Assembly: GCF_001194135.2 (NCBI RefSeq)
Contig: NC_069000.1
Coordinates: 43,346,738 to 43,383,821, forward strand
Direction: 5' to 3'
Length of the DNA: 37,084 nucleotides
From: Octopus bimaculoides
Lineage: Eukaryota
The translations under genes and the position numbers were made by a program. How positions within the stretch are numbered: the first letter of the stretch is position 1; each line of letters starts with the position of its first letter. Positions 18,435 to 37,025 of the stretch are shown piece after piece. The notes below the pieces were generated by a model. The model was not told where the DNA came from, made no database searches, and worked only from the letters and a program-made list of their open reading frames with translations.

Positions 18435-19293
18435 CACTTGGAATTTCCAAAGGTCCTGCAAGTAAAATATAATTGTAACATTTTTGTCCCACGTTTCGCA
18501 TTTTGGCTGAAGTACCACAATAATAGAGTGGTACGTGTTGATGAAAACTGTTAGTGAACCTATAATCAGGGATTCTAATAAACACAGCGACGTCACTCGT
18601 CACACTGGCTGACGAAGGTCACTGCTAGTTCTCACTATGCATGCAATTGTCTTCAGCCATCTGCTGGGATGCTACAGAACTAGACCAGCAACTTTTTGAC
18701 ACCACCTCGTACACTTGGAATTTCCAAAGTTTCTACTAGTAAAATATAATTGTAACATTTTTGTCTCATTTTGTATTTTGGCTGTTGTACCACAATAACA
18801 GAGTGGCACGTATTGATTTAAAATGCTAGCGAATCCATAAAAAGGGTTTCTAAAAGAAAGCCCTCATCACCATTTGATGCCCCTTTTTCCACGATGACGG
18901 ATTGGACGGTTCATCAGGGGCTGGTAAGCCAGAGGAGTGAGTCATGCACCAATGTCTACATTACAATAGATTTGGATGCTCTACCTAAATCCACCTACTT
19001 CACAGAGTGTATTGACGTATTTGTTGTGGCACCATCTCTAGAGAGGTCACCAATTCTCTGCAAGACATGATCCTTTAACGGACTGTTGTAAACCATACCT
19101 CACTTTTTTAATTATTCTTTATAAATCCTAATTTTAAAATAATTTCCTCATTTCCCATGAGCTTTTTGTTTTGTTTGTAGTGCCCTTTTTCATTAATTAA
19201 CTAATTAATTTTATCACTTATTAGTTTCTTCACATTTAGACAGGAAAAACTATTGCCAAATTTGCTCTAATTCATATTTGACCTGCATCAAAT

Positions 19294-19429
19294 ATGTCAC
19301 GTGGTTACAATGCTTTTGTTCGAGTCAGTCGGCGCTCGTTTTCTCTACCTACCAACCAGTTGACGACGACGACAATGATGATGATGATAATGATTATAAC
19401 AGTGATGATACTTCCATGCACGTCACTCA
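19294..19429 (+). CDS. Two-Ig gene copy 1, exon 1 (signal peptide MSRGYNAFVRVSRRSFSLPTNQLTTTTMMMMIMIITVMILPCTSL)
   Basis: ATG context, reading frame and phase-1 donor (A|gtaagt) are conserved in three paralogous copies. Hydrophobic core precedes a small-residue cleavage-like site. Confidence 0.7.
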
Positions 19430-20050
19430 GTAAGTTAAGATTAAAAACANNNNNNNNNNNNNNNNNNNNNNNNNNNNNNNNNNNNNNNNNNNNNNNNNNN
19501 NNNNNNNNNNNNNNNNNNNNNNNNNNNNNNNNNNNNNNNNNNNNNNNNNNNNNNNNNNNNNNNNNNNNNNNNNNNNNNNNNNNNNNNNNNNNNNNNNNNN
19601 NNNNNNNNNNNNNNNNNNNNNNNNNNNNNNNNNNNNNNNNNNNNNNNNNNNNNNNNNNNNNNNNNNNNNNNNNNNNNNNNNNNNNNNNNNNNNNNNNNNN
19701 NNNNNNNNNNNNNNNNNNNNNNNNNNNNNNNNNNNNNNNNNNNNNNNNNNNNNNNNNNNNNNNNNNNNNNNNNNNNNNNNNNNNNNNNNNNNNNNNNNNN
19801 NNNNNNNNNNNNNNNNNNNNNNNNNNNNNNNNNNNNNNNNNNNNNNNNNNNNNNNNNNNNNNNNNNNNNNNNNNNNNNNNNNNNNNNNNNNNNNNNNNNN
19901 NNNNNNNNNNNNNNNNNNNNNNNNNNNNNNNNNNNNNNNNNNNNNNNNNNNNNNNNNNNNNNNNNNNNNNNNNNNNNNNNNNNNNNNNNNNNNNNNNNNN
20001 NNNNNNNNNNNNNNNNNNNNNNNNNNNNNNNNNNNNNNNNNNNNNNNNAT

Positions 20051-20104
<54 letters not shown>

Positions 20105-20331
20105 CCATTAGAGGTAGAATCAACAAAAATGCGCTCCATCTATTGAGAGATAAATATAGATTTAATACACGACCCAAAGAGCTACTAATAGTTTCATGCT
20201 TTTATGATACTTGATCAGACAACTTTCAGGTTTCGTGTCTATAGTAGAAGCGATAATTAAATCTGTCTTTGATAAATTGTTTCCGTCCCATTTTTCGTGT
20301 ATTCATTCATTTATTTATTCCTCACTCATAG

Positions 20332-20664
20332 ATAGTGTTGAAATGACAAGCCTAACACCTTTCGACGGATTTGGGATCGATGGACCATCTCAAATGAATA
20401 TAGCATGTCGTCTTGATGCAAAAGACTTGATGTTCTTCAGACTCAGACGTAACAATGAAATCGTTGTTGATATTGGTTTCCACGAAGGTATAGGAGTTTT
20501 TGAAGTCATTCGTTCCGTGAAAGGTTTCAACTGCAACATGCCGCAATCAAGAACGACTAAAGCAGTATTAAAGTGCTGGAAAGAAAATCTGGATTGCAGT
20601 GACGTAGCATCCTATATATGTGAGATATCGAATGCAGAGAAGTCCAATTCAAGGATGCTAAGAG
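20332..20664 (+). CDS. Two-Ig gene copy 1, exon 2 (V-like Ig domain)
   Basis: Acceptor ctcatag, donor gttaat, 333 nt, phase 1-1. B-strand Cys (NIAC) and F-strand D-x-A-S-Y-x-C motif. Open in both paralogs despite about 19% nucleotide divergence. Confidence 0.82.
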
Positions 20665-20699
20665 GTTAATTTTGTTTCATCTTAGCGAAAAAATAGTAA

Positions 20700-20717
20700 C
20701 ACTACTACTACTACTAC

Positions 20718-20787
<70 letters not shown>
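20700..20787. repeat. (CTA)n/(TAA)n microsatellite; counterpart (TTA)n/(GTA)n at 30655..30740
   Basis: Direct reading. Confidence 0.9.
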
Positions 20788-20900
20788 CCAAAAGATTGTG
20801 CTAACAAGTACTGCCCTAATCCTTAGAAAAATCCTATCAGTTTAAATGTCTGTGTTGTATTACATCTCTTAAGTACGAAATAGCCCGGCTATAGAAAATG
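20786..20900 (+). mobile_element. R4/Dong-like (RLE) retroelement 3' tip next to (AAT)n
   Basis: Reads IQKIVLTSTALILRKILSV*, like the C-terminal motif of RLE elements. Confidence 0.5.
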
Positions 20901-20995
20901 AAGAATGTGAAGACAGTACCAGTGAAACACAAAGGTCGATGTAATCCACTAGTCCCCTCACGCCAAATTTCAGTTCTTTTGCCTTTGCGGAAAGG

Positions 20996-21031
<36 letters not shown>

Positions 21032-21161
21032 GTTCAGTAGTTTTATTTTTATAACGTGCTTTCACTTCACTACCGAGCGCAGCTCTGTGTGCCTTGGGTA
21101 TGTGCTGTGGTTTGCTGTGATGCTCTTATGGTTACTGTATTGAAAGTGTTTTGCGTAGGAT

Positions 21162-21206
<45 letters not shown>

Positions 21207-21745
21207 GTCTTCCTTCTTGCTCCAATTTTGTCACCTTTTTTTGCCCGACACCGACGCCAAAGAGACTCGCTATATACAGTGACTGTCCATTAAAATAGCC
21301 ATACCATATTCTTCATTTACAAATCCAAATAAAGTCATGTAAAAATATTCACATGGCAAGTAATTCTTCTCATAGCGGCAATGCACTTCTCAATACATCT
21401 GATGTACTAGGTAAGACAATTTTTTATACCCTTCTTGCAGGGATGGTAAGCCAGGGGTCATTCGCAAATAATTTTGAGTTCCTCTTTTGACCATTTCTAG
21501 TGCTCCTACAATCACTGCTATTGTAGCTGCCTTGAGATCCCACATTTTGTTTTCGATTTCAATGAGTTTCTTTAAATCATTTGCCCCAATATATGATTAA
21601 AAGGGATATTCCTGTCGATCAATGAACAGTGCTTATCAGTTTGGTCTACCCAAGAATAGCAGATTTATTAGCTTTGATGGTTCGATCAATATGCACCAGA
21701 GCGTCCAAATAATCGCTACATTCGCTCGCCCAGTTATATCCCTAT
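21207..21745 (-). mobile_element. R4/Dong-like (RLE) retroelement 3' fragment ending in (TAA)n
   Basis: Frameshifted pieces VHIDRTIKANKS, DKHCSLIDRNIP, MWDLKAATIAVIVGALEMV and KKIVLPSTSDVLRSAL* match the RLE consensus. Confidence 0.65.
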
Positions 21746-21938
21746 TCTAGTGTTGCTATAGTTATAACATAGATTAGTTGAAGCCCTGGAAACCGTAAAG
21801 ATATTGCATAGTAACATGTCATTTATTTTGAGCAATGTTCAACTTTTTCGTTTTATACCAACATTACAATTTGTGTCAAAGCATCCATCCAGTATGTTAT
21901 TTTGAATCTTATTGTCTTAAAATACATTTCCTCTACAG

Positions 21939-22268
21939 TGAAATCTTTTGTCAAAAGTCTTGACCATATTAATCCACCTTTTGAAAAGAAGGGGAATAAG
22001 AAGGTGTCTACCTTCAGATGTTTGGCATATGTTTCACCAGATACTCACAAAAGTGTCACCTTTAAATGGACTGTAAAACATAAGACTGAAAACGCTAAAC
22101 CAAAGATGACAAGCAAGAGAGTGCTTTTTCCGACAACTGACCAACATTGCATACCGATACAGTCGCTATATCAACACTCGTTAACTGACAAAGACGAGTC
22201 TGGGACGATTATCACATGTTCAGCATTTGGCAGCATACTTACAAAAGAAGTGAATATCATCGGTGCAA
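21939..22268 (+). CDS. Two-Ig gene copy 1, exon 3 (second Ig-like domain)
   Basis: Acceptor tttcctctacag, donor gtgagc, 330 nt, phase 1-1. Ig pattern FRC...FKW...ITC. The indel versus copy 2 is exactly one codon. Confidence 0.8.
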
Positions 22269-22321
22269 GTGAGCAAATATTCTTTTTCTTACATATCTTT
22301 ATTATCCTTATTTTCTTTAAA

Positions 22322-22625
22322 GGCAATGGTGTTGCTCTGTGGAAATACGTTTGCTTCCCAACGACATCCTTCACGACTCAGTCCCACTGCATGGCACCTT
22401 GGGCAAGTTTCTTTTATTCTAGCTCCAGCTCGACCAAAACCTTATGAGTAGATCTGATAGACGGAAACCGAAATAAGCCCGTCGTAAGAAGACCGACAGT
22501 ATGTAAAGCAGGTTTTAAACAATAAGTATTGGAGAAGATTTCTTCGACTGAACTCCACAAGTTTGTGTCCCACCTTGGCTGCAGTCCAATGACTGAATCA
22601 AGTAAAATTTAAAAGAAATAAAGAT
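22322..22625 (+). mobile_element. SINE family B in intron 3 of Ig copy 1
   Basis: cagtcccactgcatggcaccttgggcaag...gacggaaaccgaaataagcccgtcg...gctgcagtccaatgactgaatcaagtaaa. Orthologous position to 31742..32065. Confidence 0.7.
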
Positions 22626-22699
22626 ATAGGTAGCAATCACTTCTACATCGTCTCGAAACCACATTACACGGCATCAGGCCACAGGAAGACTCTCATCAA

Positions 22700-22940
22700 A
22701 CGACACCTCAAACATCACATCAGACATCATATCAAACATCAAATCAAACATCACATCAAAGTACACCACGCATCGTACATCATATAAAACAACGTATCAA
22801 ACATCACGACAAAACACATCAAACTTCATATTACATATCATACAGAACATCGCATCAAACACCACATCAAACATCATATCAAACATCACATCAAACATCA
22901 CATCAAACATCACATTAAACATCACATTATAGATCATATC
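22700..22940. repeat. 12-nt minisatellite (aaacatcacatc)n in intron 3 of copy 1, running into a gap
   Basis: Direct reading. Paralogous array at 32150..32335. Confidence 0.85.
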
Positions 22941-24049
22941 NNNNNNNNNNNNNNNNNNNNNNNNNNNNNNNNNNNNNNNNNNNNNNNNNNNNNNNNNNNN
23001 NNNNNNNNNNNNNNNNNNNNNNNNNNNNNNNNNNNNNNNNNNNNNNNNNNNNNNNNNNNNNNNNNNNNNNNNNNNNNNNNNNNNNNNNNNNNNNNNNNNN
23101 NNNNNNNNNNNNNNNNNNNNNNNNNNNNNNNNNNNNNNNNNNNNNNNNNNNNNNNNNNNNNNNNNNNNNNNNNNNNNNNNNNNNNNNNNNNNNNNNNNNN
23201 NNNNNNNNNNNNNNNNNNNNNNNNNNNNNNNNNNNNNNNNNNNNNNNNNNNNNNNNNNNNNNNNNNNNNNNNNNNNNNNNNNNNNNNNNNNNNNNNNNNN
23301 NNNNNNNNNNNNNNNNNNNNNNNNNNNNNNNNNNNNNNNNNNNNNNNNNNNNNNNNNNNNNNNNNNNNNNNNNNNNNNNNNNNNNNNNNNNNNNNNNNNN
23401 NNNNNNNNNNNNNNNNNNNNNNNNNNNNNNNNNNNNNNNNNNNNNNNNNNNNNNNNNNNNNNNNNNNNNNNNNNNNNNNNNNNNNNNNNNNNNNNNNNNN
23501 NNNNNNNNNNNNNNNNNNNNNNNNNNNNNNNNNNNNNNNNNNNNNNNNNNNNNNNNNNNNNNNNNNNNNNNNNNNNNNNNNNNNNNNNNNNNNNNNNNNN
23601 NNNNNNNNNNNNNNNNNNNNNNNNNNNNNNNNNNNNNNNNNNNNNNNNNNNNNNNNNNNNNNNNNNNNNNNNNNNNNNNNNNNNNNNNNNNNNNNNNNNN
23701 NNNNNNNNNNNNNNNNNNTGGACAAGAACGCAAAGCATCCAGAGCGTTAGGTGATACAAAAAAGGGATAACAAAACATCCAAACAGACGATACAAAGAAA
23801 ACAAGGACGGGTCATTCGGAGTTTTCTTTCCTCGGTCGAGTTCCAGATTATCCTTGCAATTTCGGCTGGTTATACTCGATATATATATATATATCAGAAT
23901 AGAGGGGCATTGTCAAACCAGGCAGAATATTTATTAATGTGTCTCTTAATACATATACGGAAGTCTAGCAAAAGAATTTGGGGGGTTGATATGTCTCCAG
24001 GTAATACTAATGTGAGATCCGAAGCAGAAGTTCATCATCGGTGACTTAT

Positions 24050-24288
24050 GATATTTTATTTGTTTATTGCCCACAGGGGGCTAGACATAGAGGGGACAAA
24101 CAAGGACAAACAAAGGACTAAGTCGGTTACATCGATCCCAGTGTGTAACTGGTACTTATGTAATCGACCCCGAAAGGATGAAACGCAGAGTCGACCTCTG
24201 CGGAATTTGAACTCAGAACGTAACGGCAGACGAAATACCGCCAAGCATTTCGCCCGGCATCCTAACGACTCTGCCAGCTTGCGGCGAC
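24050..24288 (-). mobile_element. SINE family A copy specific to unit 1
   Basis: ctggtacttatgtaatcgaccccgaaaggatg...gaatttgaactcagaacg...ctctgccagct. Confidence 0.75.
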
Positions 24289-24738
24289 TTATAATATTAT
24301 TGTTAGATAGGTGCCATTCATCAATTAGCAGGCACGAGTCTGCTAATTAATGAATGGTACATACATACATTCATTTACTATTTTCAGCCATACAGCTACA
24401 GTCAATGTGAAGCACGGAAACCGTTAGACTCTGGAGCTATGTGTATATATATATATATATATATGACTACTTTAAGTTTCTGTTAACTTTTAACAAGGCA
24501 TTGGTCGGTCCGAGATTACAATAGGGGGCAATTGCTCAATAAGAATGATTAAAATGGTGTTCGTTTTTCTCTAATTTTTTCATATATATTTCTATGGTTA
24601 CAGGTATATTCGTTGTTTAGTGACAATGGATGTGGGCAAGATTCATCCAATCGGAAAAGAAAGGTCCCAGAAAATATTTAGGAAAGTAAGTAAATGATAA
24701 TAATAGAAATGGAAAACTCAATTTATTACAAAATTTGA

Positions 24739-24744
24739 AATAAA
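24739..24744 (+). promoter_or_regulatory. Putative polyadenylation signal of Ig gene copy 1
   Basis: AATAAA inside a tract nearly identical to 32930..33140. Confidence 0.3.
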
Positions 24745-24886
24745 AATTAAAAAACTGGAACGTTGTGTCCTTAATTAAAATGTATTGTTGTATTAAAATT
24801 TACCCCGTTTCTCACGTACGTAAATATATGCATGTATATATGTATATATGTGGTCCTATAAATGTAAGTATATGTGTGTGTTTATG

Positions 24887-24932
<46 letters not shown>

Positions 24933-25067
24933 TGTATTTATGTGCGGGTATGTAAGTATACATGTGTGTGTCTATATATGTGTGTCTGTGAGTCTATGTC
25001 TATATATGTTTGTCTGTGCGTATATATACACGTGTATATTTCTGTGTGTATGTGGGTGGGGTGAGTT

Positions 25068-26526
25068 TGGTCAGGTAAAGCTCCTGGATTGGATGGTATT
25101 CCAGTTGAAATTCTGAAGGCATGTGGGGATCATATTTCATCTGAAATTCATAACCTGGTAACTCGAGTTTGGAATGAATCTTCTGTGCCACAAGAATGGA
25201 TAAATGGCATTCGAATCTCTGTATACAAGTGTAAGGGCCCGAAAGCAGTCTGTGGTAGTTCTAGAGGGATAACTCTTCTGTCACATACCACGAAGATACT
25301 TTCAAGGATCATGTTAGATCGTCTTGTTGAGAATGTGTCCACATGTGATTCCTGAAGAACAGTGGGTTTTCAGACCTGACCGAGGAACAAAGAACATGAT
25401 ATTTTCTGTGAGGCATGTTCAAGACAAATGCTTAGAGGAACAATTGCCACTATACCAGGTCGTCATAGATTTAACTAAGGCATTTGACACGGTAAAAAGG
25501 GAGGCACTATGGATTGTTTTGTGTAAATGTGGTTGTAAAACACATTTTGTGAGCATCGTTAAGGAACTACTCAGAAACATGAAATCTCAGGTAGTCTTTA
25601 ATGGTGAGGTATCTCATGAATTTTCGGTGGACAATGGTGTCAAACAGGGAGATATTCCTGGCCCTACACTTTTTCTATTTATTTTGCTGCATTACTTTGG
25701 TATGCTTTCAAGGATTGCAACAGGGGAATCGGAATCAGATTTCGGACATCTGGTCAGTCGTATTTTTTATTTGACCCAGTTTAACTGCAAAGCAAAGACT
25801 TTCAAAATGTTTGTTAGAGATGATAATGATTTGATGGCACACCCAGAGGAGGATATGCAACATTTAATGGACAGATTTTCCACTGCATGTGTACATTTTG
25901 GACTCACAATTAGTTTGGGGAAAACCAAAGTTATGTTTACTCACGTGCCAAGACAAACATATTCTGAACCGAACATTTTTGTGAATGGAACAACGTTAGA
26001 AGTCGTTGACACCTTTGTTTACCTAGGAAGCACACTATCAAGAGCTGGTTGTCTTGATGCAGAAATACACTATCGAATAGGGAAAGCTCGAAAAGCGAGT
26101 ATGGGTGGACAGGGGTATTTCCCTCCAGACAAAAATCAGTGTCTAAAAAGCATGTGTGTTGTCTGCACTTCTTTATTCAAGTGAGACATGGATCACTTAC
26201 AAGCGTCATATAAAAATGCTGGAGAGCTTTCATCAAAAGTGCTTCAGGACTCAAGTGGGAATGTTTCATACCAGATACGAGGTTTTGCGCATGGCACTTT
26301 GCAGCTCAATTGAACAACTTGTTATCTTGGCTCAAATGAAATAGACTGGACATGTTATTAGAATGAAAGACGAGTGTTTGCCAAAGCATCTTTTTCATGG
26401 TGAGCTCAATTCTGGTAAGCGACCGCAACATAAACCGAAGGAAAGGGATAAAAAGTGCGTGAAGGAAAACCTGAAGAAGCTAGATAGGAGGAAAAGTGAT
26501 TGAGAAAATGATGCTCTAGATCGGAA
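25068..26526 (+). mobile_element. RTE-clade LINE reverse transcriptase fragment, truncated at both ends, unit 1 only
   Basis: KAPGLDGIPVEILK, RGITLLS, DLTKAFDTV, GVKQG..PGPTLF, HFGLTISLGKTKVM, FVYLGS and W.GHVIRM..ECLPK.LFHGEL, with frameshifts. Confidence 0.92.
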
Positions 26527-26918
26527 TATATACTAGTCAGTGTAGTGGGGGGAGGGTGCTTATCGAAAGATTTTAAGGGGTGCATGTATTAATTTTTATA
26601 TAGACAGATAGATAAAGCGGTGAAGAATAGCAGATAGCATGTGCTGTCGTTCTTTCAGTGACCACCAACGATGGCCAGAGTTGGCAAAAGTGAAGGGGCA
26701 GAACATCCTCTATAATTCTATAATTTATTCGGTCATGAAACTACGTAACGCGTACATACATATATATATGACGGATTTTCACTCAGCTTCCGTCGAGAAG
26801 GATTTAGTAGGGCGCAGGTCTATAATGGAAGACACTTGCCCAAAGTGCTGCACGATTGCAAATTGATCCTCTTATGATCACATCCATACCTACGCGTTAC
26901 ATAAGCATGTGTGTTTTG

Positions 26919-26993
<75 letters not shown>

Positions 26994-27721
26994 ATTATAG
27001 ACTGATAGATCTGAGCGACCACAAATCGAAATAGGACACGATATGATCTATAAAAGTTGAAGAAAAATGTAGAACAAATCCACACCTAACACATACCACC
27101 ACGCACATACACATAAACAAACACACACACATACACACACGCACACTCACATTCGCACACATACAGATACGCACTTTTATTTACAGATTTAATGATATTT
27201 TGGCAAAGATCCTCCGTTGACACGATCTCACTGCTTAACTTTCCCGAAGCTAAATGTTTCGAATGCAGACACGCGGTGAATTTACTTTGGAATAATTTTG
27301 AGAATAGTTCTTTCCAATCATGTAAATTCCAAAGGAGATATTCTTGAAGAATTTAGCAGCGTTTTCTAAATTCAAAATACTCAGTTTTCGTAAATTGTTG
27401 AATTAACAAAAGCAGAGATTCTTTGCTGACAAATAATATATGAGTGTATGCATATATACGTACATGTATGTACATATCTTCATCTACATGTATATATAGA
27501 TGCATATCTGGGTACAAGACGTTGCAAACAAAACGTTGACAAAATGATAAACAGAGTACAGAAAACACACAGGCCACATAGAGAACATTTCCTTCATCAG
27601 CTGCCACCATTCTAAAACTAAGCGTAAGTGTCTTCTTTGTTGCCTTAACATCAGAATAGTGAAAGTAAAGGTAAATATATAAACTGTGTTGTTTTTTTCT
27701 CTTTCTTACGCCTTCAAAACC

Positions 27722-27881
27722 TTTATTACCTCCACCTTCGCTAAAGCGGAGGTACTGTTTAGAGACGTGTTTGTTTGTTTGTCTGTGGACGAGATATCTC
27801 AAGAACCGATGGATGGATTTGGATGAAAATTCCAGGAATGTTTAGCCTCGCGACTGGCACGAACTGACTAGATTTTGAGAT
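27722..27881. mobile_element. Possible non-autonomous Helentron/HINE-like element end
   Basis: ttattacctcc...ggaggt hairpin, then gtttgtttgtttgtctgt and gatggatttggatgaaaatt, a layout recalled from DINE/HINE-like repeats. Cut by a gap. Confidence 0.4.
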
Positions 27882-28744
27882 NNNNNNNNNNNNNNNNNNN
27901 NNNNNNNNNNNNNNNNNNNNNNNNNNNNNNNNNNNNNNNNNNNNNNNNNNNNNNNNNNNNNNNNNNNNNNNNNNNNNNNNNNNNNNNNNNNNNNNNNNNN
28001 NNNNNNNNNNNNNNNNNNNNNNNNNNNNNNNNNNNNNNNNNNNNNNNNNNNNNNNNNNNNNNNNNNNNNNNNNNNNNNNNNNNNNNNNNNNNNNNNNNNN
28101 NNNNNNNNNNNNNNNNNNNNNNNNNNNNNNNNNNNNNNNNNNNNNNNNNNNNNNNNNNNNNNNNNNNNNNNNNNNNNNNNNNNNNNNNNNNNNNNNNNNN
28201 NNNNNNNNNNNNNNNNNNNNNNNNNNNNNNNNNNNNNNNNNNNNNNNNNNNNNNNNNNNNNNNNNNNNNNNNNNNNNNNNNNNNNNNNNNNNNNNNNNNN
28301 NNNNNNNNNNNNNNNNNNNNNNNNNNNNNNNNNNNNNNNNNNNNNNNNNNNNNNNNNNNNNNNNNNNNNNNNNNNNNNNNNNNNNNNNNNNNNNNNNNNN
28401 NNNNNNNNNNNNNNNNNNNNNNNNNNNNNNNNNNNNNNNNNNNNNNNNNNNNNNNNNNNNNNNNNNNNNNNNNNNNNNNNNNNNNNNNNNNNNNNNNNNN
28501 NNNNNNNNNNNNNNNNNNNNNNNNNNNNNNNNNNNNNNNNNNNNNNNNNNNNNNNNNNNNNNNNNNNNNATATATATATATATATATATATATATACTGG
28601 ATAGATATACTGGATAGATACTATCCCTTAGTGGGTTGAACCCCCAACCCCTAACTCTCTCACGTTATATATATATATACGTGAGTGAGTGTGTGTGTGC
28701 GTGTGTATGTGGTTGTGTGTGTGTAGACACAGACATCTCAACAT

Positions 28745-29525
28745 TAAATGAACACCTTGATGTTTGAAAGCTTTAATTATCCATAGATCACTTCGTTTAA
28801 TATTTCCTAACCGAAGAAGAGGTTTCCTTCCTGCTATAGTAGCCATGTTGGTGGACATACTTCACAGAAGTACTCCGACTCACTTGGACTGGCTCTACAT
28901 CATTTGCCTGACAACGAGCATTGTTTTTAGTAAACCACCTAACAGCCCAAAGACTGCTTCGTCTCAGTGGCGTACCCTTAGCCCCAACATTCGTCAACGG
29001 AGAGGATCCTCGACATGAAGGGCGGATCATCAGCGGCAAGCTGACAGAGACCTTGACTGACCTCAACACGATGTTCGTTCTGTTCAGTTATCAGCAGCCA
29101 GTGGACAAACTAAGCAGAGACATGCCGCATGTTTCTATTCAGACGTTCCGATTGCCTGTACGGACCCATACGACAGGCCAACAGCATTAACAATGTCGTT
29201 GATAGTCCTCTGACGATCCTCGTACACAAGCTGATGAATTTTCGCCACATTTCCGAGGTTGACGCTCGTGGCAATCTTCCTGATCGCTCATCCTCTTCCA
29301 GAGAGGATCTTTCGATTTTGAAGCGTCTGCGCCTTACGATACGTTGCGCACAACCCACTGCCCCATGGTCGTAAGCTTGTCGAAGTATGTTCAATGTCTC
29401 TGTAGTAAACTTTCCAGGTTTAACGCTAAATTTTACATTGACTCTTTGTTCCAACTTCCTGTCTATGACAAAATCGCAGACTACAGTACACACATGATCA
29501 CAAAAAACACAAATTTTCACACTTT
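28745..29525 (-). mobile_element. Mariner transposon remnant, unit 2
   Basis: KLEQRVNVKFSVKPGK...EEDERSGR, continuing NMRHVSA*FVHWLL...DDPPFMSRILSVDECWG*GYATETKQ (first catalytic D region), with stops. Confidence 0.85.
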
Positions 29526-29950
29526 AGTAGCTCTACTTTGTATCGTTTGCAAACTGATATGTTCTACGATCATTAAAGTGCAACGACCTCCACAATAACC
29601 AGCCTTCAATTTGGTTTTCCGTTCCTAGGTTAATCGGAAACGTAGATTGCAGTGCTACTCATAAACCTTCTCGCTAGTTCAGTTATTTGGTGGGAAAATG
29701 CCACCAAAGCAACTTAAACCGTCCAAAAGGACAGGTTCATCTTCTAGTCCTTTATAAAAGCTAATTTTAAAATATTTTTCTCATTTCCGATGAGACTTTT
29801 TTTATGATTATTATTATTTTTCCTGTTTTGCTTATTTTGCTCCTTTTCATTAATTAACTAATTATTTTTATCACTAATTAGTTTCATCACATTTCGACAA
29901 GAAAAACTATTGCCAAATTTGTTCTAATTCATATTTGACCTGGATCAAAT

Positions 29951-30104
29951 ATGTCACGTGGTTACAGTGCTTTTGTTCGTGGTAGTTGGCGCTCGTTTTC
30001 TCTACCTGCGAACTTGTTGACAACGACGACGACGATGACGACGATGATGATGATGATGATGATGATGATTATAACAGTGATGATATTCCCGTGCACCTCA
30101 CTCA
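29951..30104 (+). CDS. Two-Ig gene copy 2, exon 1 (signal peptide with T5MT2M8 run)
   Basis: Paralogous to 19294..19429. Donor A|gtaagt. A 127-nt intron leads in frame to exon 2. Confidence 0.75.
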
Positions 30105-30231
30105 GTAAGTTAAGATTAAAAACAATAAATTTATTTCTTCAAGCTTTTCTTTCTCTCGCCTCTTTCAACAACTCTCTCGCACTTATACTGTCTTTTCATT
30201 GTTCGTCCATTTATTTATTCCTCCCTCATAG

Positions 30232-30564
30232 ATCGTGTTGAAATGACAAGCCTAACGCCTTTCGAGGGATTTAGCATCACTGGACCAACGAGAATGGAAA
30301 TAACATGTCGCTTTGAAGCCAAAAACTTAGGCTTCTTCAGACTCAGACGTAACGATGAAGTCATTGTTGATATTGGTTTCCACGAAGGTGTGGGAGTTTT
30401 TGAAGTCATTCATGCCGTGAAAGATTTCGGCTGCACCTTACCGCGAGCTGCAACGACGAGAGGTGAATTGTACTGCTGGAAAAATAACCTAGATTGCAGT
30501 GATGTAGCATCTTATACATGTGAGATATCGAATGCAAACGAGTCGAATTCAAGGTTTCTGAAAG
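30232..30564 (+). CDS. Two-Ig gene copy 2, exon 2 (V-like Ig domain)
   Basis: Acceptor ccctcatag, donor gttaat, 333 nt, phase 1-1. ITC...DVASYTC motifs. 76/111 aa identical to copy 1 (hand count). Confidence 0.85.
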
Positions 30565-30655
30565 GTTAATTTTGTTTCAGATCTTCAGATCTTCCATCTT
30601 GTTTCGTCAAATCTGTCGCAATACCTGCATTTAGGGGTCAAAACTGTTTTATTAA

Positions 30656-30741
<86 letters not shown>

Positions 30742-31188
30742 AAGCGGTGAGATTGTACACCCTTTAATACGCCGAGCAAAATGCTTACCGGTATTTCGAT
30801 CGTCCGTACATTTTGGGGTTGAAATACCGTCGAGGTAGATTTGTCGTTTTCCTATCGGGGTTGATAAAATGAGTGCCACTTGAGTACTGGGGTCGATGTT
30901 AGCGAGTATCGCCCTCCCCCACTATAAATTTCAGGCCTTGTACCTTTAGTAGAAAGGATTATTATCATTATTATTAGGGCAGTGAGCTGGCAGAATCGTT
31001 AGCGAGTCAGGAATAATGCTTAACGGCATTTCATCCATCCTTACGTTCTGAGTTCAAATCCCACCAGGGTCGACTTTGCATTTAATCCTTTCGGGGTTGA
31101 TGAATTAAGTACCAGTGAAACACTGGGGTCGATCTAATCCACTGGCTCCCAAACATTGTCGGGCCTTGTGCCTAGAGTAGAAAAAAAA
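30742..31188 (+). mobile_element. Two tandem SINE family A copies in intron 2 of Ig copy 2
   Basis: An older copy at about 30742..30960 and a younger copy at 30977..31188 (gagctggcagaatcgttagc...gggccttgtgcctagagtagaaaaaaaa). Confidence 0.75.
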
Positions 31189-31375
31189 GTGTTGCTATAG
31201 TTATAACATAAATTAGTTGAAGCCCTGTAAATCGCAAACATTTCACAGTAGCATCTCAGACAGTTTGAGTGATATTCTATGTTCTAGTTTTCTATCAACA
31301 TTGAAATTTGTATCAATATATCCATAAAGTATGATATTTTGAATCTTATTGCCCTAAAATACATTTTCTCTGCAG

Positions 31376-31702
31376 TGAAATCTTTTGTCAAAAGTCTTAA
31401 AAATATCGATCTACCTTCTGAGAAGAAGAAAAATAAGGTGTCTACATTCAGGTGTTTGGCATATGTTTCACCAGCTACACACGACTCTGTCACCTTTAGA
31501 TGGACTCTAAAACATAAGACTGAAAACGCTAAACCAAAGATGACAGACAACAAAGTGACTCTTCCGAAAACTGGCCAACGCTGCATAGCAGTGCAGTCGC
31601 TGCATCGACACACCTTAACCGACAAAGATGACACTGGAACAATTATCTCATGTTCAGCATTTGGCAGGACACTTTCAAAACAAGTGAATATCTTCGGTGC
31701 AA
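31376..31702 (+). CDS. Two-Ig gene copy 2, exon 3 (second Ig-like domain)
   Basis: Acceptor ttttctctgcag, donor gtgagc, 327 nt, phase 1-1. FRC...FRW...ISC pattern. About 71% aa identity to copy 1. Confidence 0.82.
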
Positions 31703-31741
31703 GTGAGCAAATATCCTTTTTTCGTATCCTTATTTTCTTTA

Positions 31742-32065
31742 AAGGCAATGGCGTTGCTCTGTGAGAATACGTTTGCTTCCCAACCACATCTTTCACGACT
31801 CAGTCCCACTGCATGGCACCTTGAGTAAGCATCTTCTATTCTAGTCCCGGGTTGAACAAAGCCTTATGAACAGATCTGATAGACGGAAACTGAAAGAAGC
31901 CTTTCGTAAATCCTCATGATATATCGGTTCGAGAAAAGAAGACGGAGAGTATGAGTAGGTTTTAAAGCATTGGGGACGATTTGCTTGACTGAACTCATTA
32001 AGTCGGTGCCCCATCTTGGCTGCAGTTCAATGACTGAATCAAGTAAAATTTAAAAGGAAAAAAGA
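31742..32065 (+). mobile_element. SINE family B in intron 3 of Ig copy 2 (predates the duplication)
   Basis: Same position after exon 3 and near-collinear with 22322..22625. Confidence 0.7.
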
Positions 32066-32149
32066 TATGGGCAGCAATCGCTGCTACATCGTCTCAAAAC
32101 CACATTACAGGGCATCAGGCCAAAGAAAGAACCTCATCAATCCACATTT

Positions 32150-32335
32150 CAAACATCACATCAGACATCACATCAAACATCACATCAATCCACGTATAGT
32201 ACATCATATCAAACATCACATCAAACATCACATCAAACATCACATCAAAACATACCAAACAACACATCAAGCCACACGACAAACATATGAAACCAGACAT
32301 TAAATTTCAAACCAAACAAGACATCACATCAAACT
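32150..32335. repeat. 12-nt minisatellite (aaacatcacatc)n in intron 3 of copy 2
   Basis: Direct reading. Confidence 0.85.
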
Positions 32336-32498
32336 GAAAGTATGAAAGCCTATTGGTGATAAGAATAAATGTGAATTCAGTTTCTTTGTCAGACACTAAA
32401 TCTCCTGCTTTGATGCACCAAATATTATTCCAAACTCCATGNNNNNNNNNNATGCACCAAATATTATTCCAAACTCCATGATTTTTTTGTCTTTGCAG

Positions 32499-32593
32499 AA
32501 TCTAGCAGCACCATTTCTGCTCTACCAGATACGACATGGCTTTCTGTCTCCAAACTTTCTTTTCTCTTTCTGGTTCTTGCAAGTTGCCGCTAG
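32499..32593 (+). CDS. Two-Ig gene copy 2, putative last exon (KSSSTISALPDTTWLSVSKLSFLFLVLASCR*), GPI-signal-like
   Basis: Strong acceptor ttttttgtctttgcag. The phase-1 reading required by exon 3 gives a Ser cluster, polar spacer, short hydrophobic tail and TAG at 32591-32593. Total spliced CDS is 909 nt (302 aa + stop). Confidence 0.6.
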
Positions 32594-33047
32594 CATCATC
32601 CCGTTTTTACTCAAGGATTATAAGGAAGGTTTGTTTTCCCATCTTATTACTTCATATCTCGCTTCTCCAATCATGTTGTTTTTTTGTTTTTTTTATCAGT
32701 TTACGCACTTACCACACAGCTTCTTATTACAAAGTCATGCCTATATATATTGACTTCTTTCAGCTTCTGTTTACTTAATAATCATTGATAAGGCTTTGAT
32801 TGGGCCGAGACTACAATAGGAGGTATTTGCTCAGTAAGAATGATTAAAATAGCATTCGTTTTCTTCTAACTTCTTCGTATATATTTCTTTGGTTACAGGT
32901 ACATTGGTTCTTTAGTGCTCGTAGGATTTTGACAATGGATGTGGGCAAGATTCATCCAATCGGAAAAGAAAAGTTCCAGAAAATATTTAGGAAAGTAAGT
33001 AAATGATAATAATAGAAATGGAAAACTCAATTTATTACAAAATTTGA

Positions 33048-33053
33048 AATAAA
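33048..33053 (+). promoter_or_regulatory. Putative polyadenylation signal of Ig gene copy 2
   Basis: AATAAA about 455 nt after the stop, followed by GT-rich cgttgtgtcc. Conserved in unit 1 at 24739..24744. Confidence 0.35.
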
Positions 33054-33287
33054 AAATTTGAAAACTGGAACGTTGTGTCCTTAATTAAAATGTTTTATTG
33101 TATTAAAAATTTATCCCGTTTCTCACGTACGTAAATGTATGCATGTATATATGTATATATGTGTTCGTATAAATGTGAGTGAGTATATGCATGTGTTTAT
33201 GTCTGTATATATGTGTATGTGTGTGTGTGTGTCTATGTATGTGTATGTATCCGTATATATGTATGCATGTGGACACACGCATATATA

Positions 33288-33326
<39 letters not shown>

Positions 33327-33341
33327 NNNNNNNNNNNNNNN

Positions 33342-33404
<63 letters not shown>

Positions 33405-33676
33405 AGCTGGTAAAAAAGCGAGAGAGAAAAGGGGAGAGAGAAAGATTAATGTAAAATGGTCATAGAAGTGTCAAAAAGAGTGACTATCGACAATCGGAGA
33501 TGTTAGTATATTCCAGTTTGTCGAAAGTGAAGAAAGGATCAGAATAAAACAGGCATGCGTTAATTAGTTCCATGATAGAATAAATAATAGATATATAGGT
33601 AAAATCCATTAGCAGTTTCAAACGAGAATGTTTGATGAGAATCCATGGCGCGGAATTTTGAACGTCCGAATTCCAA

Positions 33677-33847
33677 TTTAGTAGTAGAGTAGATATTTAG
33701 TAGTAGAGTAGATATTTAGTAGTAGAGTAGATATTTAGTAGTAGAGTAGATATTTAGTAGTAGAGTACATATTTAGTAGTAGAGTACATATTTAGTAGTA
33801 GAGTACATATTTAGTAGTATAGTAGATATTTAGTAGTAGAGTAGATA
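33677..33847. repeat. 19-nt minisatellite (tttagtagtagagtagata) x9
   Basis: Nine head-to-tail units with few variants (gagtacata, tagtatag). Confidence 0.92.
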
Positions 33848-35267
33848 TATACTAGTCACTATAGTGGGGAGTTGCTTATCGAAAGATTTTAAGGGCTGCA
33901 TGTATTAATTTATATATAGACAGAGAGATAAAGCGGTGAAGAATAGCAGATAGCATGTGCTGTCGTTCTTTCAGTGACCACCAACGATGGCCAGAGTTGG
34001 CAAAAGTGAAGGGGCAGAACATCCTCTATAATTCTATAATTTATTCGGTCATGGAACTACGTAACACATACATACATATATATATGACGGATTTTCACTC
34101 AGCTTCCGTCGAGAAGGATTTAGTAGGGCGCAGGTCTATAATGGAAGACACTTGCCCAAAGTGCTGCACGGTGAAACTGAACCTGAAAACATCCGGTTGC
34201 AAATTGAATCTCTAAAGATTACATCTATGCCTACGCGATAGCCAAACATGCCCGTTCGTTTTTGTATGTGTGTATGTGTGTGCGCGCGTATGTATGTATG
34301 TGTGTGCGCGTGTGTGTGTGTGTATGTGTGTAGTAATATTATAGACGAATAGATCAGAGTAACCACAAATCGAAATAGGAGACGATAGGATTTATGAAAG
34401 TTAAAGAAAAGCATGAAACAAATCCATTCCAACAACACACACCGCTACACGCGCGCGCAAACACTAACACACACGTTCTTTTTACAGAATTGATAATATT
34501 TTAGCAAAGAATGTCACTGTTTCACTTTCCCGAAGCTAAATGTTTCGAATCCAGACACGCGGTGAACGTACTTTGGAATAATTTTCAGAATAGTTCTTTC
34601 CAATCATGTAAATTCCAAAGGAGATATTCTTGAAGAATTTAGCAGCGTTTTCTAAATTCAAAATACTCAGTTTTCGTAAATTGTTGAATTAACAAAAGCA
34701 GAGATTCTTTGCTGAAACATTAAATATTTAGAACACAATTTCTTCTTTTAATATATATATATATATATATGAGTGTATATATATATGAGTGTATATATGT
34801 ATGACGATAAAAGCATCTTCTGTGTTGCTCCTGGTAAGGTCTTACTTAACATCGGAATAGTAAAAGTGAAGNNNNNNNNNNNNNNNNNNNNNNNNNNNNN
34901 NNNNNNNNNNNNNNNNNNNNNNNNNNNNNNNNNNNNNNNNNNNNNNNNNNNNNNNNNNNNNNNNNNNNNNNNNNNNNNNNNNNNNNNNNNNNNNNNNNNN
35001 NNNNNNNNNNNNNNNNNNNNNNNNNNNNNNNNNNNNNNNNNNNNNNNNNNNNNNNNNNNNNNNNNNNNNNNNNNNNNNNNNNNNNNNNNNNNNNNNNNNN
35101 NNNNNNNNNNNNNNNNNNNNNNNNNNNNNNNNNNNNNNNNNNNNNNNNNNNNNNNNNNNNNNNNNNNNNNNNNNNNNNNNNNNNNNNNNNNNNNNNNNNN
35201 NNNNNNNNNNNNNNNNNNNNNNNNNNNNNNNNNNNNNNNNATATATATATATATACATATATATATC

Positions 35268-35442
35268 GTGGCACTCCGTCGGTTCCAGTTGAGGTTACGA
35301 CGACGAGGGTTCCAGTTGATCCGATCAACGGAACAGCCTGCTAGTGATAGTGGCGTGCAAGTGGCTGGGCACTCCACAGACAAATGTCTCCTTAATGTAG
35401 TTCTCCGGGGAGAATTCAGCGTGACATAGAGTGTGACAAGGC
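35268..35442 (-). mobile_element. SINE family C 3' half
   Basis: gacgacgagggttccagttgatccgatcaacggaacagcc...gtgtgacaaggct is the reverse counterpart of 9420..9560. Confidence 0.6.
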
Positions 35443-35444
35443 TC

Positions 35445-35605
35445 AAAATCACGAATTTCACAGTTTGCGAAGTAAACACAGCAATGTCACTTGGCACACT
35501 GCCTCATGAAGGTCACTACTAGCCCCCACTGCACGCGCAATCGTGTGCAAACATCTGTTAGCGCACTACAGGACTAGTCCCGGAATTTCTTGATTACACG
35601 TCGTA
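35445..35605 (-). mobile_element. Mariner TIR and 5' leader remnant, unit 3
   Basis: ctagtcccggaatttcttgattacacgtcg|ta with the same downstream flank (cacttccaaagg...) as 18434 and 18711. Confidence 0.7.
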
Positions 35606-36886
35606 CACTTCCAAAGGCCCTGCTACTAAAATATAATTTATAAATAAACACCAAAATACAAATAACATTTTTGCCCCATATTTTTCATTTTGGCTGTTGT
35701 GCCAGAATAATAGTGGTGTGTATTGATGAAAAATGCTAGTGAATCAATAAAAAGAGATTCTTATAAAATACCTTAATATCGGATCTGTCAGACAGAAAGT
35801 GTACCAACCTTTTTTTTTTTTGTGTCCCTATACTCTCATTTATAGATACCCCAGAATCCTCTTTCTCTCTAACTCTTTCCGTTTCCCTTATTTATTCTCT
35901 TGTCTTCCACTCATTTATTCGCACTCAAACCGTTACATTCCCTCAAACATTATTTATCATAATTTTCCTTTTTGACTGCCCCCGAATTAAAACGTCTTTC
36001 CTTCTGCTGATTTTTAATTCTAACCCTAACTCCTAAAACAATTCTCTTTCTTTTTCCTGTCCCACTCTCACTCACACTTAAACCGAACTATTTAATTTCT
36101 GACCCTAAGTCACTCAACCCATTTTTTCTCACACACTAACTCATCATTTCTTAGTCTGTCTCTTCTACGCATTGTATTTCTTCTCTCAAAATTAAGTCCT
36201 TCTCTTCTTGCTTGATATCGGAATAATCACATAAACAAAAGCTGATATTCTGGATAAATGCATTTAAAATATCAACTTTTGATGCTGCAATTCTTCCGAT
36301 ATTACTCGTATTCATCGTACCTTTATTCAGATTTTTGTACATCATCAGCATAGTCAGTTTAGAAAAAGGAAAACAATTTGTTTCTTTATTGCTTGATATA
36401 TCACCCTCGTTATTCTCATCCACTTCCCCATCGTCATCACCATTTGATGTCCCTTTTTCTATGATGACATAGATTAGACGGTTCATCAGGGGCTGGTAAA
36501 CCAGAGGAATGAGTCATGCACCAATGTCTACATTACAATAGTTTCTACAGATGGATGCTCTGCCTAAGTCCACCTACTTTACAGAGTGTATTGATGTATT
36601 TGTTGTGGCACCATCCCTAGTGAGGTCACCAATTCTCTGCAAGACAAGATCCCTCAACGGACTGTCGTAATCCATGCATCACTTTCTTAATTATTCTTTA
36701 TAAAAGATAATTTTAAAAATAATTTTCTCATTTCACAGGAGTGTTTTTATATTTCTTTCTGTTTTGCTTGTTGTGCACTTTTTCATTAATTAACTAATTA
36801 ATTTTATCACTTATTAGTTTCGTCACATTTCGACACGAAGATCCATCGCCAACTTTGCTCTAATTTATATTTGATCTGGATCAAAT

Positions 36887-37025
36887 ATGTCACGTGGTTA
36901 CAATGCTTTTGTTCGGGGCAGTCGGCACCCGTTTTCTCTACCAACCAACCTGTTGACGACAACGACGATAATGATGATGATGATAATGATTATAACAGTG
37001 ATGATATTTCCGTGCACCTCACACA
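36887..37025 (+). CDS. Two-Ig gene copy 3, exon 1 (MSRGYNAFVRGSRHPFSLPTNLLTTTTIMMMMIMIITVMIFPCTSH); rest of gene outside the window
   Basis: Paralogous to exon 1 of copies 1 and 2, with the same ATG context and A|gtaagt donor. Confidence 0.7.

What the first reader, a model, noticed from the sequence alone, without database searches (positions are those of the whole stretch)
19294..37025. Tandem family of unnamed two-Ig, probably GPI-anchored cell-surface proteins
Seen: at least three tandem genes with the same phase-1 exon layout (signal peptide, V-like Ig, second Ig, short hydrophobic tail). Copy 2 splices to 302 aa. Splice sites and frames are intact, and the only coding indels are whole codons. 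I do not recognise the sequence as any named family. Established: SP + 2 Ig + GPI is the architecture of Drosophila Dprs and vertebrate CD48/CD58, and tandem polymorphic Ig arrays underlie Hydractinia Alr allorecognition. Inference: a lineage-specific expanded recognition code (neural wiring, skin/sucker sensing or immunity) that continues beyond the window.
Basis: partly seen in the sequence, partly recalled or inferred. Interest (0 to 1): 0.85.

Follow-up and report, generated by a model that had tools for sequence, protein, structure and literature searches.

The report
Octopus-specific tandem two-Ig surface genes
The window holds three tandem copies of an octopus-only gene for a small, probably lipid-anchored cell-surface protein with two antibody-like domains. 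The genes are real and evolve very fast, are already in the public annotation as "uncharacterized", and belong to a family of at least 13 genes whose function is unknown.

Summary
The window is Octopus bimaculoides chromosome CM046620.1, about 43.35-43.38 Mb. Copies 1 and 2 carry the same phase-1, GT-AG exon set. Copy 3 shows only exon 1 in the window, and its other exons lie just beyond it. Copy 2 splices to 302 aa, 100% identical to NCBI "uncharacterized protein LOC106878953 isoform X1".

No assembly gap cuts a visible exon. However, copy 1's tail exon is hidden in gap 22941-23718. Copy 2's tail exon sits on a separate 875-bp contig whose first 103 nt are 99% identical to copy 3.

Pfam finds nothing. 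AlphaFold models (pLDDT 80-94) and Foldseek give a 9-strand V-like domain plus a 7-strand C-like Ig domain. The C-terminus looks like a GPI signal.

Profile searches find relatives only in octopods (Octopus species and Argonauta). O. bimaculoides has at least 13 loci, most of them on this chromosome.

Evolution is very fast. Against the syntenic O. sinensis gene, dN/dS is 0.93, compared with 0.12 for the neighbouring guanylate cyclase. Frames, splice sites and the cysteine framework are nevertheless kept.

This is a new lineage-specific member of a familiar kind. A role in recognition is plausible but untested.

The parts
19182..19293 (+). Copy 1 proximal promoter or 5' block conserved across the family (TTAATTAACTAAyT ... 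TATCAC ... GAAGAACTATTGC)
   Evidence: alignment. The block is 87-89% identical among copies 1-3 and the O. sinensis ortholog. It is 64% identical to paralogs whose exon 2 nucleotides are only 47-58% identical.
19294..19429 (+). Copy 1 exon 1: start codon, long N-terminal region, and a Met/Thr-rich signal-peptide core encoded by an (ATG)n/(ACG)n repeat. Phase-1 donor.
20332..20664 (+). Copy 1 exon 2: V-like Ig domain (D1)
   Evidence: family HMM E=1e-37
21939..22268 (+). Copy 1 exon 3: second, C-like Ig domain (D2)
22941..23718 (.). Assembly gap that most likely hides copy 1's tail exon (exon 4)
   Evidence: The intron-3 minisatellite runs into the gap. In the gap-free O. sinensis ortholog, exon 4 lies about 180 bp past the last aligned base. 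Copy 1's own 3' flank reappears at 24454-24943, 84% identical to copy 2's.
29839..29950 (+). Copy 2 conserved proximal promoter or 5' block
29951..30104 (+). Copy 2 exon 1 (signal peptide)
   Evidence: The N-terminal MSRGY is invariant among the six closest family proteins, including the 35%-identical P0006. In more distant paralogs the ATG and its flank still align but the residues differ (MSCGY, MSLGC).
30232..30564 (+). Copy 2 exon 2: V-like Ig domain, 9 predicted strands, with C26...D-x-A-x-Y-x-C97 and three extra family-conserved Cys (domain numbering)
   Evidence: pLDDT 94; best matches are VHH/VL domains, TM 0.5-0.72
31376..31702 (+). Copy 2 exon 3: C-like Ig domain, 7 predicted strands, with the Cys-Trp-Cys framework
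32442..32451 (.). 10-N gap in intron 3 of copy 2, flanked on both sides by the same 29-nt string. It is a contig join at a repeat boundary.
32499..32593 (+). Tail exon (exon 4): Ser-rich candidate omega region, spacer, hydrophobic C-terminus ending ...ASCR, then stop. It is placed with copy 2, but its contig is 99% identical over its first 103 nt to copy 3.
36887..37025 (+). Copy 3 exon 1. Its remaining exons lie beyond the window (partial exon 2, exon 3, partial exon 4 at L001 18234-18431, 19232-19537, 20794-20850).
22694..22927 (.). (CATCACATCAAA)n minisatellite in intron 3 of copy 1. Its counterpart in copy 2 is at 32135-32270.

Best explanation
These are three functional, tandemly duplicated paralogs of an octopod-restricted gene family in the immunoglobulin superfamily. 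NCBI annotates them only as 'uncharacterized protein LOC106878953'.

Each gene has four exons joined by phase-1 introns:
- exon 1: a signal peptide;
- exon 2: a membrane-distal V-like Ig domain;
- exon 3: a C-like Ig domain;
- exon 4: a short Ser-rich stalk ending in a hydrophobic C-terminus with no cytoplasmic residues.

Shown here: the gene structure, the fold (as predicted), the family size and distribution, the high amino-acid substitution rate with a preserved framework, and a promoter block shared by the paralogs.

Inferred mechanism:
1. The protein enters the secretory pathway.
2. The C-terminal peptide is exchanged for a GPI anchor.
3. The protein sits on the outer leaflet with the V-like domain outward, where it binds a partner in trans or in cis.
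4. Lacking a cytoplasmic domain, it acts as a ligand or co-receptor, not as a signalling receptor.

Because the protein sequence changes almost as fast as silent sites while the frame, the splice sites and the cysteines are kept, the partner is probably itself fast-changing. That points to a pathogen, gamete or self/non-self type of interface more than to a conserved neuronal wiring code.
For: Gene structure and intact frames:
- Exon models.
- Copy 2 is identical to the NCBI model.
- The same four-exon layout is found in four other family genes.

Fold:
- The full-length AF2 model has two beta domains at pLDDT 80-94.
- Foldseek gives 1124 PDB hits at E<=1e-3. The top hits are V+C chains (Fab), butyrophilins and CD58.
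- The D1-only model has pLDDT 94 and 9 strands, and best matches VHH/VL domains at TM up to 0.72.
- The family keeps D-x-A/G-x-Y-x-C in D1 and Cys-Trp-Cys in D2.
- The family profile weakly hits titin Ig domains (E=7e-4) and generic Ig proteins.

GPI-like tail:
- Small-residue cluster, spacer, and a 12-18-residue hydrophobic end; mean Kyte-Doolittle 1.6-3.0.

Selection:
- Syntenic O. sinensis gene pair: dS 0.185, dN 0.171, omega 0.93.
- Neighbouring guanylate cyclase control: dS 0.21, omega 0.12.
- In a neutral simulation, the chance of no stop codon is about 0.03 per pair.
- Exon indels are whole codons, whereas intron indels are 2, 6, 11, 12, 24 and 28 nt.

Family:
- 43 profile hits; all strong ones are Octopus or Argonauta.
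- Chromosome map.
- Shared promoter block.
Against: - No expression or splice-junction data could be checked here.
- No Pfam Ig model reaches its threshold. D1 lacks the canonical C-strand Trp. So the Ig assignment is structural and predicted.
- Omega confidence intervals include 1 (0.60-1.55 and 0.48-1.12), so relaxed constraint cannot be separated from diversifying selection.
- No dedicated GPI predictor was available.
- Other family members carry a transmembrane helix plus a tail, or appear secreted, so the anchor type is not fixed in the family.
- The tail exon of copy 2 lies on a different contig from exons 1-3.
Confidence: 0.75

Rival explanations
1. The copies are decaying duplicates (unprocessed pseudogenes) that drift neutrally, and the gene models are annotation artefacts.
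For: dN/dS is 0.56-0.93 with intervals that reach 1. Exon nucleotide identity (81-84%) is no higher than flanking intron identity (81-86%). No transcript evidence was seen.
Against: - All visible exons of three copies and of the O. sinensis counterparts are open, with canonical splice sites.
- A neutral simulation gives about a 3% chance per pair of escaping stop codons.
- Exon indels are only whole codons.
- The cysteines and Trp are invariant down to 23-35% identity across the family.
- A promoter block is conserved.
Confidence: 0.06
2. The family is a neuronal or sensory cell-surface wiring code, comparable to the Drosophila Dpr/DIP or Beat/Side families.
For: - Two Ig domains.
- A mix of GPI-like, transmembrane and secreted members, as in Beat proteins (the Beat comparison is from my own knowledge).
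- A tandem expansion in an animal with a large nervous system.
- A shared promoter block with TAATTA homeodomain-type motifs.
Against: - Pairs that are orthologous by synteny or closest sequence are only 65-74% identical between two congeneric species, with omega near 1. Wiring-code families are usually well conserved (my own knowledge).
- There is no sequence relation to Dpr, DIP or Beat in a search of 1.84 billion representatives.
- No expression data.
Confidence: 0.2
3. The cluster works like clustered protocadherins or UGT1: variable cassettes (exons 1-3), each with its own promoter, spliced to one shared terminal exon.
For: - NCBI isoform X2 joins copy 1's exons 1-3 to a tail identical to copy 2's.
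- Only one complete tail exon is visible in the window.
- Each copy has its own conserved promoter.
Against: - Copy 1's intron 3 is collinear with copy 2's up to the gap, and copy 1's own 3' flank reappears after the gap.
- Copy 3 has its own tail exon.
- The four O. sinensis and O. bimaculoides genes mapped on gap-free or separate loci each carry their own tail exon.
- Isoform X2 is therefore best read as a consequence of the gap.
Confidence: 0.06
4. The proteins are not GPI-anchored. Instead they are tail-less type I membrane proteins, or are secreted after C-terminal processing.
For: The hydrophobic end of copies 1-3 is only moderately hydrophobic and is interrupted by Ser and Lys. Relatives with true transmembrane helices or with no anchor exist.
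Against: The stretch is too short for a stable membrane span and ends 1-2 residues before the stop. It is preceded by a Ser/Gly/Ala cluster at the usual spacing, and this pattern is shared by at least 8 family members.
Confidence: 0.15
5. The copies are mis-assembled alleles or a scaffolding artefact of one gene.
For: The region has 13 gaps. The exon-4 contig is 99% identical to copy 3 over 103 nt.
Against: - The copies differ by 16-23% in nucleotides in both exons and introns.
- They carry different transposon insertions.
- Copy 1 is syntenic with one O. sinensis gene on a gap-free locus, and copies 2 and 3 each match a different O. sinensis gene best.
Confidence: 0.02

Closest known systems
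Vertebrate CD2/SLAM-family members CD48 and CD58 (GPI isoform)
   Same: Signal peptide, membrane-distal V-type domain, C-type domain and GPI anchor. The genes are tandemly clustered and fast-evolving (my own knowledge). CD58 (1ccz) is among the Foldseek hits at E=9e-6.
   Different: No detectable sequence relation. The octopus D1 keeps the B-F cysteine pair, which CD2-family V domains lack (my own knowledge), and adds three further conserved cysteines.
Butyrophilin / B7-type IgV-IgC ectodomains
   Same: A V + C two-domain ectodomain. BTN2A1 and BTN3A1 are among the top structural matches. Butyrophilin genes are clustered and rapidly evolving (my own knowledge).
   Different: Butyrophilins are transmembrane proteins with B30.2 tails. 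No sequence homology was found. TM-scores are low (0.33-0.36) because the domain hinge differs.
Drosophila Beat, Dpr and DIP families
   Same: Small Ig-only surface proteins in expanded families. Beat members are membrane-bound, GPI-linked or secreted (my own knowledge), which parallels the octopus family.
   Different: No sequence match. The insect families are conserved and neuronal, whereas this family is octopod-only and evolves at omega 0.6-0.9.
Hydractinia Alr allorecognition genes
   Same: Tandem arrays of fast-evolving genes with V-like Ig domains.
   Different: Alr proteins are transmembrane proteins with cytoplasmic tails and are defined by extreme allelic polymorphism, which cannot be assessed from one genome. 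There is no sequence relation.
NCBI gene models LOC106878953 (isoforms X1 and X2), LOC106878948 and LOC106878952 (O. bimaculoides), and LOC118766831/2/3 and LOC118761863 (O. sinensis)
   Same: Copy 2 is 100% identical to isoform X1. Copy 1's exons 1-3 equal isoform X2. The O. sinensis loci are the syntenic (copy 1) or closest-sequence (copies 2 and 3) counterparts.
   Different: The annotation merges two genes into one locus, with a tail that may be borrowed. It gives no name, domain or function.

Membership tests
Immunoglobulin superfamily (fold) | Two-sheet beta sandwich of 7-9 strands that matches solved Ig domains | tested here: met
   AF2 models have pLDDT 80-94 (full length) and 94 (D1 alone). 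Foldseek top hits are all Ig V or V+C chains. The structure is predicted, not solved.
Immunoglobulin superfamily (fold) | Conserved B-strand and F-strand cysteines, and the D-x-G/A-x-Y-x-C motif | tested here: met
   D1 has C77...D142-x-x-x-Y146-x-C148. D2 has C189...C255. These are invariant or nearly so in 18-32 family sequences.
Immunoglobulin superfamily (fold) | Conserved C-strand tryptophan | tested here: inconclusive
   It is present and invariant in D2 (W205). In D1 the position is Phe/Leu (FFRL), so it is absent there.
Immunoglobulin superfamily (sequence families) | A match to a Pfam Ig model above its gathering score | tested here: not met
   Copies 1 and 2 have no Ig hit. Relatives reach only E=0.017-0.04 for Ig_2 and C2-set_2, below the cut-off. 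The family profile hits titin Ig at E=7e-4.
GPI-anchored proteins | An N-terminal signal peptide plus a C-terminal signal (small omega-site residues, a 6-10-residue spacer, a hydrophobic end, no cytoplasmic residues) | tested here: met
   Judged by inspection and hydropathy only...AKSSSTISALPDTTWLSVSKLSFLFLVLASCR-stop. The same pattern is seen in at least 8 relatives.
GPI-anchored proteins | Release by PI-PLC, or a call from a dedicated predictor | not testable with these tools
   No GPI predictor or experiment was available.
CD2/SLAM family | Sequence homology, and an N-terminal V domain without the canonical disulfide | tested here: not met
   No sequence hit. D1 keeps both canonical cysteines. 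The disulfide criterion comes from my own knowledge.
Dpr / DIP / Beat | Sequence homology to the insect families, and conservation across protostomes | tested here: not met
   A profile search of 1.84 billion representatives returns only octopod proteins, plus three weak generic Ig hits.
Clustered variable/constant-exon loci (protocadherin or UGT1 type) | Variable units share one set of downstream constant exons | tested here: not met
   Copy 3 and the mapped genes LOC118766831, LOC106878948, LOC106878952 and LOC106870302 each carry their own tail exon. Copy 1's is hidden by a gap.
Allorecognition-type polymorphic Ig loci (Hydractinia Alr) | Extreme allelic polymorphism within a species | not testable with these tools
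   Only one haploid assembly per species was available.

The most novel reading that the evidence does not exclude
The octopod-only family of V+C Ig surface proteins is a diversifying recognition system for non-self, pathogens or gametes. Its features are two clusters on one chromosome, GPI-linked, transmembrane and secreted forms, a shared promoter module, and amino-acid change at nearly the silent rate. It would be an invertebrate counterpart of the CD2/SLAM or butyrophilin-type families that arose independently in octopods, with the V-like domain as the variable binding face.
Probability: 0.25. Interest if true: 0.7.

Novelty: new member of a known kind. Interest (0 to 1): 0.4.

Why it matters
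Cephalopod cell-surface recognition is known mainly through the protocadherin expansion, and their immune receptors are poorly charted. A clustered, orphan, fast-evolving Ig family limited to octopods is a concrete set of candidates for either role.

It also gives annotators three practical corrections:
- LOC106878953 is at least two genes.
- The tail exons sit in repeat-induced gaps.
- None of the 13 family proteins scanned here reaches a Pfam Ig threshold.

The architecture itself is ordinary, so the value lies in follow-up work on expression, polymorphism and binding partners.

Tried and rejected
- **Pfam scans.** Scans of copies 1 and 2 and of ten relatives gave no family above threshold.
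- **PDB sequence searches.** A single-sequence search found nothing. A family-profile search found only titin Ig at E=7e-4.
- **Literature.** Searches by LOC identifiers, by run accessions and by topic found no paper on the family. The one LOC-prefix hit (PMC9258296) no longer contains the term and is unrelated. The 2015 octopus genome paper is not held.
- **Exact-protein look-ups.** P0003, P0006 and P0020 are not on record, so ortholog dN/dS could be computed only for copy 1.
- **Transcript evidence.** The Logan contigs carrying P0045 looked like possible transcripts. They are genomic: a D1 exon read through into the introns on both sides.
- **Start-codon E-box.** The CACGTG overlapping the start codon was considered as a promoter element. 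It is rejected as the reason for conservation there, because divergent paralogs keep the ATG and its flank but not the E-box.
- **tRNA scan.** A scan for SINE heads found none.
- **Second profile search.** A search with 18 diverse members added no new taxa.
- **Mis-assembled alleles and shared constant exon.** Both were considered and rejected (see the rival explanations).

Full report
**Source and layout**

The 302-aa protein spliced from copy 2 is 100% identical to NCBI [quoted passage not shown]. Its gene lies on chromosome CM046620.1. That places the window at about 43,346,738-43,383,821. The window is 38% GC and has 13 runs of N.

**Checking the observation**

I rebuilt the gene models directly from the sequence.
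- Copy 1: 19294-19429, 20332-20664, 21939-22268.
- Copy 2: 29951-30104, 30232-30564, 31376-31702, 32499-32593 (stop).
- Copy 3: 36887-37025, after which the window ends.

Every intron is GT..AG and phase 1. Exon lengths differ only by multiples of three. TBLASTN with copy 2's exons, and family HMMs run on all six frames, find these exons and no others in the window.

Fetching the flanking DNA (L001) shows that copy 3 continues beyond the window. It has a partial exon 2 (its 5' half is in a gap), exon 3, and the first 19 codons of exon 4, which is cut by another gap. So three tandem copies exist, but only two show Ig exons inside the window.

**The gaps**

None of the gaps interrupts a visible exon.
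- 19450-20048 lies in intron 1 of copy 1 and abuts an (ATAG)n repeat.
- 27882-28569, 33327-33341 and 34872-35240 are intergenic.

Two gaps do matter.
- **Gap 22941-23718.** It begins inside the intron-3 minisatellite of copy 1, exactly where the gap-free O. sinensis ortholog places the tail exon. Copy 1's tail exon is therefore unobserved. Copy 1's own 3' flank reappears at 24454-24943.
- **The 10-N gap at 32442-32451.** It is flanked on both sides by the same 29-nt string. The 875-bp contig to its right carries the tail exon, and its first 103 nt are 99% identical to copy 3. Elsewhere the copies are 77-82% identical.

All three copies have a gap at this equivalent place. The best reading is that a near-identical tract around exon 4, produced by gene conversion or by assembly collapse, broke the short-read assembly.

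This also explains NCBI isoform X2, which is copy 1's exons 1-3 joined to a tail identical to copy 2's. Each related gene that could be mapped carries its own tail exon, so a shared constant exon is unlikely.

**What the protein is**

Sequence-family searches fail.
- Pfam gives no hit for copies 1 and 2.
- Relatives give only sub-threshold Ig_2 and C2-set hits.
- A single-sequence search of the PDB finds nothing.

Structure prediction is clear.
- With six homologs, AlphaFold2 gives two beta domains at pLDDT 80-94 (residues 52-160 and 166-272), a disordered N-terminus and a C-terminal helix.
- Foldseek returns 1124 PDB hits at E<=1e-3. The top hits are Fab V+C chains, butyrophilin ectodomains and CD58.
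- D1 alone, modelled with 32 family sequences, reaches pLDDT 94 with nine strands. It best matches VHH and VL domains, with TM up to 0.72.

The family invariants fit an Ig framework.
- D1 has the B-strand Cys and D-x-A/G-x-Y-x-C.
- D2 has Cys-Trp-Cys.
- D1 also has three extra conserved cysteines and lacks the usual Trp.
- The family profile weakly hits titin Ig (E=7e-4).
- It also weakly hits three proteins outside the octopods, two of them labelled Ig-like domain-containing (a bivalve and a lamprey protein).

The C-terminus is ...AKSSSTISALPDTTWLSVSKLSFLFLVLASCR-stop. It has a small-residue cluster, a spacer and a hydrophobic end, with no cytoplasmic residues. At least eight relatives repeat this pattern. 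That is the form of a GPI-attachment signal, but I judged it by inspection only.

**The wider family**

A profile search of 1.84 billion representative proteins finds 43 hits. All the strong hits come from O. bimaculoides, O. sinensis, O. vulgaris and Argonauta hians. A second search with 18 diverse members adds only more Octopus loci.

O. bimaculoides has at least 13 loci.
- LOC106878948 lies at 43.40 Mb (+).
- LOC106878952 lies at 43.43 Mb (-).
- LOC106870302 lies at 43.98 Mb.
- LOC106880708 lies at 16.3 Mb. LOC106880713/14/15 are on the same chromosome and, by their locus numbers, probably beside it.

The four-exon layout is conserved. C-termini vary: some are GPI-like, some are a transmembrane helix plus a cytoplasmic tail, and some are secreted or mucin-like.

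A block of about 90 bp just upstream of the start codon is 64% identical between copies 1-3 and paralogs whose exon 2 is only 47-58% identical. It contains TAATTA-type motifs. This suggests the paralogs share regulation, which is an inference.

**Evolution**

Copy 1 is syntenic with O. sinensis LOC118766831, with collinear flanks running from the guanylate cyclase gene. Even so, the Ig exons are only 66-70% identical in protein.

| Comparison | dS | dN | omega (95% bootstrap interval) |
|---|---|---|---|
| Copy 1 vs O. sinensis LOC118766831 | 0.185 | 0.171 | 0.93 (0.60-1.55) |
| Paralog pairs within the window | 0.27-0.39 | 0.19-0.30 | 0.56-0.89 |
| Two guanylate cyclase exons, 6-8 kb upstream, same species pair | 0.21 | 0.026 | 0.12 |

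Exon identity equals intron identity. Three results nevertheless argue against simple decay.
- A neutral simulation gives only about a 3% chance that one pair escapes stop codons.
- Intron indels are not multiples of three, whereas the single exon indel is one codon.
- The cysteine framework is kept at 23-35% identity across the family.

The genes are therefore maintained, but their surfaces change very fast. Relaxed constraint and diversifying selection cannot be separated with pairwise data.

**Interpretation**

The shown parts are the gene structure, the predicted fold, the tail pattern, the family distribution and the substitution rate.

The inferred part is the mechanism: a GPI-anchored surface protein that presents a V-like domain to a binding partner and signals, if at all, through cis partners.

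The rate argues for a fast-changing partner (immune, reproductive or self/non-self) over a conserved neuronal code. No expression data were available, so the neural reading stays open.

**Novelty**

The gene models already exist in public annotation without a name. No paper in the held library mentions them. The architecture is common in animals. I file this as a new, lineage-specific member of a known kind, of moderate interest.

Noticed in passing
window 8809-13626 (+); L002 3038-3187 and 20130-20276: The 3' half of a soluble guanylate cyclase gene lies just upstream of the Ig cluster. It comprises an HNOBA-like exon, a coiled-coil exon, two cyclase-domain exons and a last exon at 13477-13626. 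In O. sinensis the last exon is present twice, on either side of Ig gene 1. The annotated cyclase model uses the distal copy, so the Ig gene is nested in its last intron. No second copy is visible in the O. bimaculoides window, although it could be in a gap.
   Followed up: partly
window 22941, 32442 and L001 20851; window 19450 and 37085: Assembly gaps recur at equivalent places in each repeat unit: at intron 3 / exon 4 in all three copies, and in intron 1 just after exon 1 in two of the three. Many gaps abut microsatellites. This pattern points to repeat-induced contig breaks, not random gaps.
   Followed up: yes
window 19370-19400, 30026-30068, 36965-36995: The hydrophobic core of the signal peptide is a run of Met (and Thr) encoded by an (ATG)n/(ACG)n trinucleotide repeat. 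The Met run in front of the conserved II(T/S)VMI differs between copies and orthologs: it is 8-9 uninterrupted Met in copy 2, P0004 and P0005, 6 in P0003, and MMMMIM in copies 1 and 3. In another frame the same repeat would read poly-Asp.
   Followed up: partly
window 22694-22927, 32135-32270; L001 19939-20478: A (CATCACATCAAA)n minisatellite sits in intron 3 of every copy. In copy 3 the public collection calls it as a 179-aa 'gene', which is spurious.
   Followed up: yes
window 2-600 (+), 25324-26184 (+), 1109-2093 (-), 17882-18286 (-), 29110-29520 (-): Transposon remnants are present: LINE reverse-transcriptase fragments and Tc1/mariner transposase fragments. The mariner N-terminal fragment lies inside the duplicated unit (17989-18297 matches 29218-29527), so it predates the duplication. 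SINE-like elements are scattered in the introns.
   Followed up: partly
window 7000-8000: A strongly strand-skewed, purine-rich low-complexity tract (GC skew 0.60, AT skew 0.32) lies about 1-2 kb upstream of the first guanylate cyclase exon seen in the window, probably in one of that gene's introns.
   Followed up: no
window 19182-19262, 29839-29919, 36775-36855; L003, L004 and L005 upstream regions: A proximal upstream block with TTAATTAACTAA, TATCAC and GAAGAACTATTGC motifs is conserved among paralogs that share only about 30% protein identity. Two distant paralogs also carry a GTCACGTGATTA E-box about 230 bp upstream.
   Followed up: partly
L007, L008 (Logan SRR11869390, SRR11869384): A family D1 exon with intron read-through on both sides occurs in short-read assemblies of runs from an unidentified organism, probably another octopod.
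   Followed up: partly
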